Made by a program: the position numbers and the translations under genes. The notes under the pieces are model-generated. The model was given only the letters and a program-made list of their open reading frames with translations. It was not told the origin of the DNA and made no database searches. A stretch of 64,000 nucleotides of DNA from Ranitomeya imitator (taxonomy: Eukaryota). Location: positions 15,934,001 to 15,998,000 of the forward strand of contig NC_091288.1 of the NCBI RefSeq assembly GCF_032444005.1. The letters run 5' to 3'. Numbering within the stretch: the stretch's first letter is position 1; each line of letters opens with the position of its first letter. Positions 6,030 through 63,249 of this stretch are shown piece by piece.

Positions 6030-9000
6030 TTAATACTCTTCTCCCTCCTCTCCTTCCCCCTCTCCTTCCACGCTATCAGTGCCGACCTCTTCGTAATCCT
6101 TCTCCAGGGCGGCCATGTCCTCCCGAGCCTCAGAGAACTCTCCCTCCTCCATGCCCTCTCCCACATACCAGTGCACGAAGGCTCGCTTGGCGTACATGAG
6201 GTCAAACTTGTGGTCCAGGCGAGCCCAGGCCTCGGCAATGGCGGTGGTGTTACTCAGCATGCACACAGCGCGCTGCACCTTGGCCAGGTCTCCACCGGGA
6301 ACCACAGTTGGTGGTTGATAATTGATTCCAACTTTGAACCCTGTTGGGCACCAGTCCACAAACTGGATGGTGCGCTTGGTCTTTATGGTGGCAATGGCGG
6401 CATTGACATCCTTGGGGACAACATCACCACGATAAAGCATACAGCAAGCCATGTATTTGCCATGTCTGGGGTCACATTTCACCATCTGGTTGGCTGGCTC
6501 AAAACAAGCGTTGGTGATCTCAGCCACTGTGAGCTGCTCATGGTAAGCTTTCTCTGCAGAGATGACGGGGGCATAGGTGGCCAGGGGGAAGTGGATACGA
6601 GGGTAGGGCACCAGGTTGGTTTGAAACTCTGTCAAGTCCACATTCAGAGCACCATCAAACCTGAGAGAGGCTGTGATGGAGGACACGATCTGACCGATCA
6701 GACGGTTCAGGTTGGTGTAGGTCGGGCGCTCAATGTCCAGGTTTCTGCGGCAGATGTCATAGATGGCCTCATTGTCCACCATGAAGGCGCAGTCTGAGTG
6801 CTCCAGTGTGGTGTGCGTGGTGAGGATGGAGTTGTATGGCTCAACCACAGCGGTGGAGATCTGGGGGGCAGGGTAGACGGAGAACTCCAGCTTGGACTTC
6901 TTGCCATAGTCAACGGAGAGACGTTCCATCAAGAGGGAGGTGAAGCCTGATCCAGTACCACCACCGAAACTGTGGAAGATGAGGAAACCCTGGAGACCTG
7001 TGCACTGATCCGCCTGATGGAGAAATGACACAAAAGAAAATTAAACTTAGAGAAGACATTTCTCTAAAGCGTTGAGGATTAAAAACTCCACCCCAATTAT
7101 TTATCTCTTAAGACGTCTTCTCTATATCCTACTATCTGTATTGTTACTTTGGGTTCAATATAGCAGAATACATGAACACATCTCCATGAACATTGACATT
7201 GACATTGACATTAGGGTTAAACCACCAAGGTGAATGTCTACTTATTTCTCTACATTTCAGTTCACTTGTTGTGTATGTCCTATTCTAATGTATAATGTTC
7301 TTCTGTCAACAAACTGTCATGTCAACTATGTAATTCCTTTATGATTTTTATGATTTAAGTTGTGCTGCTGTGATACCATAATTTCCCACGGGATCAATAA
7401 AGTGTATCGTATCGTATCGTATCGTAACTCACCAGCTTGCGGGTCCTGTCCAGCACCAGGTCAATGATCTCTTTGCCAATGGTGTAATGGCCACGGGCGT
7501 AGTTATTGGCGGCATCTTCCTTGCCGGTGATGAGCTGCTCAGGGTGGAACAGTTGTCTGTAGGTTCCAGTTCTCACCTCGTCTGTAGGAGATAGATAATA
7601 GAGGTTTCTATTTGAGATCAAGAACTGACCGCCCCTCTCATATCTTCAGATCTCCACTGACATCTATTCTACTCGTGGTCATAGACAATCAACCGATGTA
7701 CTCACCGATCACAGTGGGCTCCAGGTCCACAAACACAGCGCGGGGGACGTGTTTACCAGCCCCTGTCTCACTGAAGAAGGTATTGAAGGAATCATCTCCT
7801 CCACCGATGGTCTTATCACTGGGCATCTGCCCGTCCGGCTGGATACCGTGTTCCAGGCAGTACAACTCCCAGCAGGCATTGCCCATCTGGACTCCGGCCT
7901 GGCCAACGTGGACTGAGATACATTCTCTCTATAAACGTATAAGGATCGGGTGTGAAAACATGAACAAACATATGTAATCTGAATTCTATAAGGCAGTCCA
8001 GTTACTTTATCTTATGAGAATACAATATATCTTGAGATCTTCTTAAATAGAATTTCCAGTGAAGCCCATATGGATCGTCACTTGTAATCATGACGTCTAG
8101 TATCATTTTAGACTCTTTTAGGATTCTGCATGATAATATATGTTCCCCTCCATACAGTCAGGTTACTCATAGCCTGTGACATGCATGCCGCTGCACAGGG
8201 CACAGTCTGCCGCCGCACTGCTGCTTTCTGTGTCTTGGATCTGCATCTGTCTTTCTCTAGATTCCCGCTCAGAACATGGAATTATCTATATTACTTTGAC
8301 GTTTGACAGATGTGATGGCCAACCCTGCCTCTGTGATGTCTGCGCAATGCACAATGGCGTAATGAAGCTCCTGTGACAAAGTTGCCTTCAACTATCACCA
8401 GTTTTTAGTATTAGTCTTATGTAAAGGTCAAAGTGACCTTTTGTACCCCCTTAAGTTCCAGGTGTAACTGCTGGCCCTGCACCCCATAAAATTACGCCAC
8501 AGACAATGCATCTTGGGACATTCTGCATAGTCATCAGAGCTACTGGCCATAAATAGGGACTTCTGCAATCTTCAAGGTGGAAGCTGTCGCGAAACGCGCG
8601 TCGGGGTCTGACAAGGAGTAAGCGTGCCACGCGGCTGTTAGCAGAGACCACCGACTATTTGGGTAATATGCATTTTTGCCAATTTTGTTTTGAGTTATGT
8701 GGTTGGATGTACCGTATGTTGATAACAGCAGGTTACACTGATGGTAATTGGCTAGATTGCTAGATTGCATGGACTTTTGAGGTCCTGCTGGTGTGGATAC
8801 ACTTGAGCAGTAAATGAATTGCAATTTGCTGTATAGGAGCTCAGTTCACTTTATATATAGATGATTTCAGTGCTTATTAAGTGAATAGCATAGCGTTAGC
8901 ATTAAGCTTACTCAATAGTTATTGATAGCAGCTCGTATTTCTATACTGGTTCAAGTGTAATCCCGGTGTTTTTCACATATGCATGACTCTATAAGCTAAC

Positions 9001-61000: not shown

Positions 61001-63249
61001 GGGATTCTCCATGTTGTTGTTAATGGTTTTTTCATGCTGTCTCACTCGGCCTCGCTCAGACCTCCGTCTATGGATCATGCACAGACCGGCCGCTTGTCTC
61101 CTGGCCATATATCGTTATGAAGCTATGAAGTTCGGCTCAGGAGACTGCCGCTATCCTGGACATCCTGATCCGTACACGGACGTGTGAATGAGGCTTAGGA
61201 CTTGGTATCTGCTGGTCCATAAAGAAACAGAGAACCAGCGCTCCATCCAGGTGTACTATTCCAAATAACGATCTTTATTGAGCCATGTAATAGCAACGTT
61301 TCGACCCGGAGGTCTTTTTCAAGCATGAAACGGGTCGAAACGTTGCTATTACATGGCTCAATAAAGATCGTTATTTGGAATACTACACCTGGATGGAGCG
61401 CTGGTTCTTTGTTTCTTTATGGACTATGTGGATGTTCCAGTAAGGTTCCCTGGATATGGACCTGGCGCCCCAGTGAGTGAGTGCTGTCAGTCTCTCTTTT
61501 CTCTTTGGTATCTGCTGGTGGCTGATCTTACCCTACATGCACATTGCACATTATATGGTTGACCCCATCTCCAAATGTAGAAACCCATGAGTGGACCCCT
61601 CACCTACGAAGACCGGACCATTCTATTGTAGAAAGAGGCTTAAAGAAGCATCAGGAGAGGGCTGTGACCTGTACGAGAGAAATCCAGAGTGAAAACTCAT
61701 TTCTTAATGTATTTTCTTTATTTTTCAGAGGGAATGCATCTCCGTCCACGTTGGCCAGGCTGGAGTCCAGATGGGCAATGCCTGCTGGGAGTTGTACTGC
61801 CTGGAACACGGTATCCAGCCGGACGGGCAGATGCCCAGTGAGAAGACCATCGGTGGAAGCGACGATTCCTTTACTACATTCTTCAGTGAGACGGGGGCTG
61901 GTAAACACGTCCCCCGCGCTGTTTTTGTGGACCTGGAGCCCACTGTGATCGGTGAGTATAATGGGTAGGGGGGTCCTTCTAAAGCAGCACCCACATGGCG
62001 CCATATAATTTTCCTTGCATCCTAATCTCTCCACTCCATTCTCTTTCTAGATGAGGTCAGGTCCGGCAGCTACCGCCAACTTTTCCACCCAGAACAGCTC
62101 ATCAGTGGCAAGGAAGATGCAGCCAACAACTACGCCCGAGGCCATTACACCATCGGCAAGGAGATCATTGATCCCGTCCTGGACAGAATCCGCAAGCTGG
62201 TGAGTGATTCGTATTGATCATCTCTCTGCGTGCCGTGGGCCATGTTCAGCTAGTAATTGTGCTCTCTACTCTTACAGGCCGATCAGTGCACAGGTTTGCA
62301 GGGATTTTTGGTTTTCCACAGTTTCGGTGGTGGCACTGGATCAGGCTTCACCTCCCTCTTGATGGAACGTCTCTCTGTTGACTTTGGCAAGAAGTCCAAG
62401 CTGGAGTTCTCCATCTATCCAGCACCTCAGGTTTCCACCGCTGTGGTTGAGCCATACAACTCCATCCTCACCACGCACACCACACTGGAGCACTCAGACT
62501 GCGCCTTCATGGTGGACAATGAGGCCATCTATGACATCTGCCGCAGGAACCTGGACATTGAGCGCCCGTCCTACACCAACCTGAACCGACTCATTAGTCA
62601 GATCGTGTCCTCCATCACAGCCTCTCTCAGATTTGATGGTGCTCTGAATGTGGACTTGACAGAGTTCCAGACCAACCTGGTGCCCTACCCTCGTATCCAC
62701 TTCCCCCTGGCCACCTATGCCCCCGTCATCTCTGCAGAGAAAGCTTACCATGAGCAGCTCTCTGTGTCCGAGATCACCAACGCTTGTTTTGAGCCAGCCA
62801 ACCAGATGGTGAAATGTGACCCCAGACACGGCAAATACATGGCCTGCTGCCTGCTGTACCGCGGTGATGTTGTCCCCAAGGATGTCAATGCCGCCATTGC
62901 TGCTATTAAGACCAAGCGCACCATCCAGTTTGTGGACTGGTGCCCAACAGGATTCAAAGTTGGAATCAATTACCAACCACCAACTGCAGTTCCCGGTGGA
63001 GACCTGGCCAAGGTGCAGCGCGCTGTGTGCATGCTGAGTAACACCACCGCCATTGCCGAGGCCTGGGCTCGCCTGGACCACAAGTTTGACCTCATGTACG
63101 CCAAGCGAGCCTTCGTGCACTGGTATGTGGGAGAGGGCATGGAGGAGGGAGAGTTCTCTGAGGCTCGGGAGGACATGGCCGCCCTGGAGAAGGATTACGA
63201 AGAGGTCGGGATAGACTCTTATGAAGATGAGGATGAAGGAGAAGAATAA
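52065..63249 (+). CDS. tuba4a: Tubulin alpha-4A, 448 aa; join(52065..52067,61729..61951,62051..62199,62278..63249)
   Basis: Exons 2-4 are unambiguous (223/149/972 nt, GT-AG). Diagnostic residues: V7, M16, T50, P117, A334, and tail [13 protein letters not shown] without Tyr as in mammalian TUBA4A. Exon 1 is the best ATG|GTGAG candidate I found upstream (about 0.75 confidence), giving a 9.66-kb intron 1. Confidence 0.9.
52586..53183. repeat. 24-bp CpG-rich minisatellite (GCCACACGACACACTCAGCGCTGC), about 25 copies
   Basis: Direct reading. Confidence 0.95.
54422..54847. mobile_element. T2/Kolobok-like MITE with an internal 35-bp array (54448-54715, about 8 copies)
   Basis: Ends AGGGAATCTGTTA / TGACAGGTTCCCT+TTAA; unit GGACCGCCCACTGGACTCGTGCAGACCACACAATA. 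Confidence 0.7.
56107..58159. repeat. 39-50 bp G-tract minisatellite (CTGAGGCCTGGTCAC(T/C)G(G/C)TGCACGGTGCTGTGCTGCT..GnAT)
   Basis: About 45 copies with variable G runs and a gradient of unit variants along the array. Confidence 0.93.
58984..59158. repeat. 33-bp tandem array, each unit carrying GTCACGTGAC
   Basis: Palindrome starts at 58990, 59023, 59056, 59089 and 59122. Confidence 0.95.
59804..60981 (-). repeat. 86-bp tandem array, same family as 11315-12540 but inverted
   Basis: Reverse complement of the earlier unit; 80-bp variant units at about 60060, 60484 and 60822. Confidence 0.95.
61217..61504. mobile_element. Penelope-derived fold-back insertion in tuba4a intron 1
   Basis: 94-bp inverted arms (61215-61308 / 61331-61424, 2 mismatches); 15-bp direct repeat TTGGTATCTGCTGGT at 61202-61216 and 61505-61519. 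Confidence 0.75.
61293..61324 (-). ncRNA. Variant (U3-A8) minimal hammerhead-like motif
   Basis: Minus strand reads GC-TTGAAAA-A-GACC-TCCG-GGTC-GAAAC-GTT-GC. Confidence 0.45.

What the first reader, a model, noticed from the sequence alone, without database searches (positions are those of the whole stretch)
6082..63209. Gene-conversion signature between TUBA4A and its deeply diverged neighbours
By eye, tuba4a 62989-63209 (221 bp) is identical, including all synonymous sites, to gene A 6082-6302 and gene B 20348-20568. A second ~113-bp tract (about 62434-62546) matches gene A exactly, and about 95 bp of exon 2 differs at one base. Identity stops abruptly at the isotype-defining tail, and introns and UTRs mostly do not align. 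TUBA4A and tyrosinated alpha-tubulins are ancient paralogues, so their synonymous sites should be saturated. The pattern implies recent, patchy conversion across an inverted ~40-55 kb interval while selection protects isotype residues. Conversion is known in the mammalian TUBA1A/B/C cluster; I do not know of a description for the TUBA4A locus.
Basis: partly seen in the sequence, partly recalled or inferred. Interest (0 to 1): 0.7.

Follow-up and report, generated by a model that had tools for sequence, protein, structure and literature searches.

The report
Gene conversion among frog alpha-tubulin neighbours
Three neighbouring alpha-tubulin genes in a frog genome, one of them TUBA4A, have repeatedly copied stretches of coding exons onto each other, while the few positions that make each version distinct stayed different. 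This is a well-supported but ordinary kind of event, at a locus where I found no published description.

Summary
Window 62989-63209 (+) matches 6082-6302 (-) and 20348-20568 (-) at 221 of 221 bases. The 113-bp tract 62434-62546 is identical to gene A.

The window holds three intact alpha-tubulin genes. C has a TUBA4A tail. A and B have tyrosinated tails and lie head-to-head with C.

- **Divergence by exon:** the share of silent sites that differ (pS) between C and A/B is 0.15-0.19 in exons 2 and 4 but 0.53 in exon 3. GC3 is the same in exons 3 and 4.
- **Non-coding DNA:** introns and flanks align no better than shuffled sequence.
- **Islands:** silent differences unique to C sit a mean of 4 codons from C-specific amino-acid changes (p=5e-5). 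pS is 0.38 inside these islands and 0.10 outside.
- **No general silent-site constraint:** against bird, desman and bullfrog tubulins, pS is about 0.5-0.6, also inside the 221-bp tract.
- **Trees:** exon 4 groups A, B and C together (98/97 support). Exon 3 does not.
- **Other species:** a desman locus shows the same exon pattern.

Best reading: patchy interlocus gene conversion, with selection protecting isotype residues. The scan noted conversion before on other DNA of this genome (H1-10 and lactase paralogues).

The parts
62278..63249 (+). Gene C (TUBA4A type), exon 4 with stop codon. Its tail lacks a terminal tyrosine.
   Evidence: AG acceptor and open frame. Pfam Tubulin and Tubulin_C match. 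The tail is identical to desman TUBA4A.
62051..62199 (+). Gene C exon 3, the unconverted exon (pS 0.53, dS 0.93 against A and B).
   Evidence: AG/GT borders, divergence, tree.
61729..61951 (+). Gene C exon 2, homogenised (pS 0.15-0.19). It holds three C-specific residues near the K40 loop.
6030..7013 (-). Gene A (tyrosinated tail, Tub1K/TUBA4B-position type), exon 4 with stop codon.
7433..7581 (-). Gene A exon 3.
7706..7928 (-). Gene A exon 2.
20296..21279 (-). Gene B (same type as A), exon 4 with stop codon.
22215..22363 (-). Gene B exon 3. Similarity to A continues about 70 bp into intron 2, so this A-B tract crosses an exon border.
22445..22667 (-). Gene B exon 2.
62989..63209 (+). 221-bp tract identical in A (6082-6302), B (20348-20568) and C. 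It ends one codon before the tails.
   Evidence: pS about 0.5 against other species in the same codons.
62434..62546 (+). 113-bp tract identical between C and A (107 bp identical with B).
62797..62864 (+). 68-bp tract where C equals B. Its 3' part (exon-4 nt 552-585, window 62829-62862) is where A differs at 7 sites. It is followed at 62865-62877 by a patch where C equals A and B differs at 4 sites. Together these are the mosaic of separate events.
62296..62313 (+). Island of C-unique differences around the I-to-V change at codon 12 of exon 4. Further islands lie at 62376-62384, 62418-62433, 62569-62596, 62761-62767, 62901-62907 and 62952-62988.
   Evidence: Variable-site map. Clustering test p=5e-5. 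pS 0.38 inside and 0.10 outside the islands.
63210..63249 (+). Isotype-defining C-terminal tail of C, unconverted.

Best explanation
The window carries the conserved head-to-head alpha-tubulin pair of tetrapods. TUBA4A is gene C, and the opposite-strand neighbour (Tub1K in Findeisen's names, at the place of the human TUBA4B pseudogene) is present here as two copies, A and B. The three genes are old duplicates, because their introns, UTRs, exon 3 (C against A/B) and tails are fully diverged. Non-allelic homologous repair has repeatedly copied short stretches of exon 4 and exon 2 from one gene to another without crossover. This happened between C and A, C and B, and A and B. Copying that would overwrite isotype-specific residues is removed by selection. 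Old silent differences therefore survive only as small islands next to those residues, in exon 3 and in the tail. Shown here: the tracts, the uneven divergence, the islands, the lack of general silent-site constraint, and grouping by species in exon 4. Inferred: the repair mechanism, the role of selection, and the reason exon 3 escapes. Exon 3 is short (149 bp), lies between non-homologous introns, is dense in isotype residues, and is now too diverged to start pairing.
For: Gene models are intact, with conserved splice sites. pS between C and A/B is 0.15-0.19 in exon 2, 0.53 in exon 3 and 0.17-0.19 in exon 4 (Fisher p=1.2e-5), with equal GC3 of 0.67-0.73. The longest run free of silent differences is 71 codons (p<=0.006). 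C-unique silent codons lie a mean of 4 codons from C-specific replacements (p=5e-5). pS is 0.38 within 3 codons of such replacements and 0.10-0.125 outside; the A-B comparison shows no such contrast (0.128 against 0.143). Introns and flanks score like shuffled sequence. Against manakin and desman TUBA4A and bullfrog TUBA1, pS is 0.45-0.74 in exon 4 and 0.49-0.56 in the 221-bp tract. The exon-4 tree groups frog A, B and C (98/97) and the two desman genes (100/100). The exon-3 tree does not join C with A/B. C equals B where A is 7 sites off, and C equals A where B is 4 sites off, so there were several events. Synteny and age come from PMC4202323 and L004. In the desman pair, exon 2 differs at 1 of 223 bases and exon 4 is 99.8% identical, but exon 3 is 79% identical and the tails differ.
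Against: No TUBA4A locus from another frog could be fetched, so grouping by species rests on a bird, a mammal and an unlinked bullfrog gene. No unlinked alpha-tubulin of this same genome was available as a codon-bias control. Outside the identical tracts silent divergence is about 0.1, so most of the homogenisation is not recent. The direction of copying is unknown. The desman locus comes from an assembly with an N gap exactly at the border of exon 4, so its near-identity could be partly an assembly effect.
Confidence: 0.85

Rival explanations
1. Selection on silent sites (codon bias, mRNA structure or a regulatory element in the mRNA) keeps the coding sequences alike without any copying.
For: Tubulins are highly expressed, and GC3 is about 0.7 in all three genes. 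The 221-bp tract encodes the most conserved part of the protein.
Against: The same codons show pS 0.49-0.56 against bird, desman and bullfrog genes. Exon 3 has the same GC3 but pS 0.53. Constraint does not predict silent differences clustered beside isotype residues, or the switches between C=B and C=A.
Confidence: 0.04
2. Assembly or polishing artefact: reads of one paralogue were used to correct the others, creating false identical tracts.
For: No read-level check was possible. Three copies at 95-97% identity are a known hazard for polishing.
Against: The tracts alternate with blocks of differences specific to each paralogue, and these blocks coincide with amino-acid differences and respect codon structure. 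31-letter words of the gene C stretch occur in contigs of at least six studies, at shares of 0.56-0.81. Independent assemblies of a desman and two manakins show the same kind of pattern.
Confidence: 0.05
3. A and B are young, frog-specific copies of TUBA4A (silent divergence about 0.2) that later received exon 3 and a tyrosinated tail from another alpha-tubulin. On this reading most of the similarity is recent common descent, not conversion.
For: The exon-4 tree alone cannot tell a lineage-specific duplication from conversion. Findeisen et al. speak of Tub1K duplicates in frogs.
Against: Introns and flanks of A/B against C are at background level, although a silent divergence of 0.2 would leave them easy to align. 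The opposite-strand pair is shared with mammals and anole. Silent divergence inside the islands (0.38) and in exon 3 (0.53) is old. This scenario also needs segmental replacement, which is conversion under another name.
Confidence: 0.05

Closest known systems
Concerted evolution of the gamma-tubulin pair TUBG1/TUBG2 in mammals (McGrath et al. 2009, PMC2720389)
   Same: These are two linked tubulin paralogues about 45 kb apart, kept alike by ongoing gene conversion for over 100 million years. Paralogues are more alike than orthologues.
   Different: That pair is in direct orientation and belongs to a different tubulin class. Here the genes are inverted (head-to-head), there are three partners, and an isotype tail, one whole exon and small islands escape.
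Islands of divergence that persist under gene conversion (GOT1 paralogues of Tigriopus, PMC3728101; interlocus gene conversion in teleost duplicates, PMC10503786). I read the abstracts only.
   Same: The homogenised background is interrupted by diverged islands, read as sites under selection for paralogue-specific function.
   Different: These are other gene families and taxa. Here the islands coincide with regions known to define tubulin isotypes: the neighbourhood of the K40 loop, exon 3 and the C-terminal tail.
Tub1F (TUBA4A) / Tub1K opposite-strand cluster described by Findeisen et al. 2014 (PMC4202323)
   Same: It is the same locus and arrangement, and Tub1K duplicates in frogs are mentioned.
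   Different: That paper never mentions gene conversion (0 occurrences). It explains similarity within a lineage by recent duplication.
Concerted evolution of beta-tubulin arrays in Leishmania and trypanosomes (PMC1533823, PMC1855330). I read the titles and abstracts only.
   Same: Tubulin paralogues are homogenised in coding regions while untranslated regions differ.
   Different: These are tandem arrays in protists, mainly dosage repeats, without maintenance of isotypes.

Membership tests
alpha-tubulin | Tubulin GTPase and Tubulin_C domains | tested here: met
   Exon 4 of A, B and C matches PF00091 (E 6e-24 to 6e-25) and PF03953 (E about 1e-53).
alpha-tubulin | Vertebrate exon structure (exon 2 of 223 nt, exon 3 of 149 nt, long exon 4) with an open frame | tested here: met
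   AG/GT borders and lengths are identical in A, B, C, manakin, desman TUBA4A and bullfrog. Exon 1 was not located.
TUBA4A orthologue (gene C) | C-terminal tail that ends without an encoded tyrosine | tested here: met
   The tail of C is identical to desman TUBA4A and one to two residues from the manakin tail.
TUBA4A orthologue (gene C) | Isotype residues outside the tail | tested here: met
   C shares the proline in the exon-3 motif before the exon end, and A for T at exon-4 codon 209, with desman TUBA4A. A and B carry the TUBA1-like states.
TUBA4A orthologue (gene C) | Synteny: STK16 beyond the 3' end | not testable with these tools
   The window ends 750 bp after the stop codon of C. STK16 is seen in the desman and manakin loci.
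Tub1K / TUBA4B-position gene (genes A and B) | Lies on the strand opposite to TUBA4A, head-to-head | tested here: met
   A and B are on the minus strand and C on the plus strand, with 5' ends facing each other. The desman has the same arrangement, as described in PMC4202323.
Tub1K / TUBA4B-position gene (genes A and B) | Orthology of sequence to Tub1K of other tetrapods | tested here: inconclusive
   The tail resembles the desman neighbour and a Xenopus tropicalis 'tuba1c like 2' model. However, tyrosinated tails are all alike, and the converted exons carry no signal.
interlocus gene conversion / concerted evolution | Identity tracts longer than chance, given the number of silent differences | tested here: met
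   A run of 71 codons, p=0.0005-0.006.
interlocus gene conversion / concerted evolution | Different histories for different segments of the same genes | tested here: met
   Exon 3 pS 0.53 against 0.15-0.19 elsewhere. The exon-4 tree groups A, B and C; the exon-3 tree does not.
interlocus gene conversion / concerted evolution | Paralogues closer within a species than orthologues between species | tested here: met
   Within-frog pS is 0.14-0.19 against 0.5 or more to bird and mammal TUBA4A. It was not tested against other frogs.
interlocus gene conversion / concerted evolution | Neutral flanks older than the converted part | tested here: met
   Introns, 3' flanks and 5' flanks score like shuffled sequence.
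interlocus gene conversion / concerted evolution | The sequence is real at read level and the tracts are not an assembly product | not testable with these tools

The most novel reading that the evidence does not exclude
The head-to-head pair of TUBA4A and its opposite-strand neighbour has evolved in concert, restricted to exons 2 and 4, across tetrapods for more than 300 million years (frog here, desman, and the tandem TUBA4A-type pair of birds). The small set of positions that resist homogenisation (around the K40 loop, exon 3, about ten residues of exon 4, and the tail) would then be a natural map of what defines the TUBA4A isotype. Many 'recent, lineage-specific duplications' in published tubulin trees would in part be conversion artefacts.
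Probability: 0.45. Interest if true: 0.55.

Novelty: new member of a known kind. Interest (0 to 1): 0.4.

Why it matters
Gene conversion between linked paralogues is textbook, and it is published for gamma-tubulin. The mechanism is therefore not new. There are three modest points of value.

- **Undescribed locus.** In the paper library I found no description of conversion at the TUBA4A locus. The main survey of tubulin evolution explains within-lineage similarity by recent duplication only.
- **A map of protected residues.** The islands that resist homogenisation point to the residues selection keeps different between a non-tyrosinated and a tyrosinated alpha-tubulin. That gives tubulin-code work a short, testable list.
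- **A warning for orthology calls.** Orthology and dating of alpha-tubulin genes from coding sequence will be wrong at this locus. Tails, exon 3 and synteny should be used instead.

Tried and rejected
- **Protein searches for frog TUBA4A and neighbour genes.** The collection is clustered at 90% identity, so frog TUBA4A hides inside bird and mammal clusters. Only TUBA8-type frog proteins, a bullfrog TUBA1 and a UniRef-only Xenopus model surfaced.
- **Cluster listing.** It gave one Rhinoderma protein, which is not TUBA4A, and its locus is not on record.
- **Exact look-ups.** The Xenopus model, two open reading frames of exon 4 of C, and a bat TUBA4A were all not on record.
- **Horned-lizard locus L005.** It holds one partial tubulin gene with gaps and no neighbour within 10 kb, so I did not use it.
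- **Reads.** There is therefore no expression, splice or assembly check.
- **Joined proteins.** The spliced proteins of A, B and C were never joined or searched. Searches were made on exon 4 by reference, and divergence was counted exon by exon.
- **Metagenome scan.** I considered scanning metagenome contigs with a degenerate pattern of the TUBA4A tail. I rejected it because human TUBA4A has the same tail and human contigs would have been fetched.
- **The 86-bp satellite arrays upstream of A and C.** I tested whether they were duplicated as one unit. Every register gives 94-95.5% identity, so there is no sign of that.
- **Runs test on the order of A-unique and B-unique sites.** By hand I counted 14 runs against 15.9 expected, which is not significant. 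The mosaic argument rests on the local blocks instead.
- **Papers.** None describes conversion at TUBA4A or in the TUBA1A/B/C cluster in this library.
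Full report
**Observation**

Window 6082-6302 equals 20348-20568, and both equal the reverse complement of 62989-63209, at 221 of 221 bases. A repeat scan and BLAST of the window against itself show that these tracts are the ends of much longer matches. Exon 4 of the three genes is 94.8-96.7% identical over 935-990 bases, and exon 2 is 94-97% identical over about 232 bases. 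Exon 3 is only 84% identical between the right-hand gene and the two left-hand genes. The second tract, 62434-62546, is identical to gene A over 113 bases. In exon 2 all three genes are identical over exon positions 34-113.

**Anatomy**

ORF lists and splice sites give three intact alpha-tubulin genes with the usual vertebrate structure.

| Gene | Strand | Exon 2 | Exon 3 | Exon 4 |
|---|---|---|---|---|
| A | minus | 7706-7928 | 7433-7581 | 6030-7013 |
| B | minus | 22445-22667 | 22215-22363 | 20296-21279 |
| C | plus | 61729-61951 | 62051-62199 | 62278-63249 |

- All exons have AG/GT borders, and exon 4 matches Pfam Tubulin and Tubulin_C.
- Exon 1, which holds only the start codon and the 5' UTR, was not located.
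- C ends in a TUBA4A tail without a terminal tyrosine. A and B end in a tyrosinated acidic tail.
- The 5' ends of B and C face each other across about 39 kb of satellites and transposons.

**Age of the genes**

Findeisen et al. 2014 (PMC4202323) report that their Tub1F lies in a cluster, on the opposite strand, with a gene they call Tub1K. Tub1F is the only alpha-tubulin on mouse chromosome 1 and sits beside the human TUBA4B pseudogene, so it is TUBA4A. They report this arrangement in mammals, frogs and anole, and say that frogs have Tub1K duplicates. A desman locus fetched here (L004) shows the order STK16, TUBA4A, an opposite-strand tubulin gene, DNAJB2. A and B are therefore most simply the two frog copies of that neighbour gene, and the pair goes back at least to early tetrapods.

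Within the window, introns 2 and 3, 300 bases of 3' flank and 300 bases upstream of exon 2 give local alignment scores equal to shuffled sequence for every pair. The one exception is the last ~70 bases of intron 2 between A and B.

**Divergence by exon**

Nei-Gojobori counts, made exon by exon, give the share of silent sites that differ (pS):

| Comparison | Exon 2 | Exon 3 | Exon 4 (codons 1-312) |
|---|---|---|---|
| C vs A/B | 0.15-0.19 | 0.53 (dS 0.93) | 0.17-0.19 |
| A vs B | 0.10 | 0.06 | 0.14 |

- The contrast between exon 3 and exons 2 plus 4 has Fisher p=1.2e-5.
- GC3 is 0.67-0.73 in exons 3 and 4 of all three genes, so composition does not explain the contrast.
- Replacement divergence is very low (A vs B pN 0.003), so all three genes are under purifying selection.

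**Tracts and islands**

- The longest run of codons without a silent difference is 71 for C vs A and for C vs B. Permutation gives p=0.0005-0.001 over all exons and 0.0005-0.006 within exon 4.
- The 19 silent codons of exon 4 that are unique to C lie a mean of 4 codons (median 3) from the nearest of the ten C-specific amino-acid replacements (p=5e-5).
- Within three codons of such a replacement, pS between C and A/B is 0.38. Outside it is 0.10-0.125, which is no higher than between A and B (0.14).
- A vs B shows no such contrast (0.128 against 0.143).
- The map of variable sites also shows switches. At exon-4 positions 552-585 C equals B while A differs at seven sites. At 588-600 C equals A while B differs at four sites. 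From 712 to 932 all three are identical.
- Several separate events, involving each pair, are therefore needed.

**Is it silent-site constraint?**

I fetched three outgroup loci: two manakin TUBA4A loci (L001, L002), a bullfrog TUBA1-type gene (L003) and the desman locus (L004).

- Against these, frog A, B and C show pS 0.51-0.73 in exon 2 and 0.50-0.62 in exon 4.
- In the very codons of the 221-bp tract, pS is 0.49-0.56.
- These codons are therefore free to change at silent sites over time, and an alpha-tubulin of another frog is not close to A, B or C.
- An unlinked alpha-tubulin of this same genome was not available as a control.

**Trees**

- The exon-4 tree (nt 10-933, IQ-TREE) groups frog A, B and C with 98/97 support and the two desman genes with 100/100.
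- The exon-3 tree joins A with B (85/92) but leaves C apart on a long branch, in an unresolved fork with desman TUBA4A and the bird genes.
- The segments therefore have different histories, as conversion predicts.

**The same thing elsewhere**

- *Desman.* TUBA4A and its head-to-head neighbour differ at 1 of 223 bases in exon 2 and are 99.8% identical over 925 bases of exon 4. Exon 3 is 79% identical, with indels and a stop codon in the neighbour, and the tails differ. This is the frog's exon pattern in a mammal.
- *Caveat on the desman.* That assembly has an N gap exactly at the border of exon 4, so part of the identity could be an assembly effect.
- *Manakins.* In the two species, the two tandem TUBA4A-type genes are identical in exon 2 within a species, while the species differ (pS 0.039). 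The paralogues differ more in exon 3 (0.147).

**Explanation**

The best explanation is repeated, patchy interlocus gene conversion among three old, linked, inverted paralogues. It is confined to the two exons that still offer long stretches of identity. Selection removes conversions that overwrite isotype residues.

Exon 3 is 149 bases long, lies between non-homologous introns and carries six replacement differences in 49 codons. It no longer offers a stretch of identity long enough for pairing. That last step is inference. The A-B tract that runs 70 bases into intron 2 argues for copying at the DNA level rather than through a cDNA.

'Recent' holds for the identical tracts only. The background silent divergence of about 0.1 means that most of the homogenisation is older.

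**What could not be done**

- *No other frog locus.* No frog TUBA4A locus could be fetched.
- *No reads laid.* Sequencing runs holding the gene C stretch exist in at least six studies. No read-level check of the assembly, of splicing or of expression was therefore possible.
- *No joined proteins.* The spliced proteins were never joined or searched. Searches used exon 4 by reference.
- *No human contigs.* No contig that I take for human was fetched.

**Comparison with what is known, and verdict**

Conversion between linked tubulin paralogues is published for TUBG1/TUBG2 (PMC2720389) and for protist tubulin arrays. Islands of divergence under conversion are a known pattern (PMC3728101, abstract). 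I found nothing on the TUBA4A locus, and Findeisen et al. do not mention conversion.

This is a new, clean example of a known process. Earlier notes of this scan report conversion between H1-10 paralogues and between lactase paralogues in the same genome. I did not test those.

Noticed in passing
window 11343-12541 and 59810-60981: Two arrays of an 86-bp satellite, about 14 copies each, lie upstream of gene A and of gene C in mirrored orientation, like the genes. No such array lies upstream of B. The arrays are 94-95.5% alike in every register, so nothing shows they were copied as one unit.
   Followed up: partly
L004:20998-23407 and L004:5696-7791 (Galemys pyrenaicus): The desman's head-to-head neighbour of TUBA4A has exons 2 and 4 almost identical to TUBA4A. 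Its exon 3 has frameshifts and a stop codon, and its tail differs. This may be a decaying gene whose long exons are kept 'fresh' by conversion, or it may be an assembly effect: an N run at 6660-6833 abuts exon 4.
   Followed up: partly
L001 and L002 (two manakin assemblies), genes at about 4.0-8.1 kb and 10.0-13.7 kb: Birds carry two tandem TUBA4A-type genes with the same tail. Exon 2 is identical between the paralogues but differs between the species. Exon 3 is the most diverged exon here too.
   Followed up: partly
window 62494-63288 (-) and 6018-6797 (+): Open reading frames of about 260 codons run antisense through exon 4 of C and of A. A UniRef model of Xenopus tropicalis 'tubulin alpha 1c like, gene 2' (P0260) starts with about 260 residues that read like this antisense frame. 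It looks like a mis-model that joins an inverted tubulin neighbour.
   Followed up: no
window 33279-38965: An LTR retrotransposon has 748-bp LTRs that are 99.87% identical and long internal ORFs (33887-38338), so it is a recent insertion between B and C. An older, 77% similar inverted copy lies at 41021-41798.
   Followed up: no
window 44989-58180 and 12780-15900: Large blocks of tandem repeats fill much of the interval between the genes. The first block has periods of 37, 50, 24, 35, 44 and 46 bp. The second has a period of about 22-23 bp and carries long spurious ORFs.
   Followed up: no
window 2605-2746 and 63862-64000: A 140-bp piece, 86.6% alike and inverted, lies downstream of both A and C. 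It is probably a fragment of a short mobile element.
   Followed up: no
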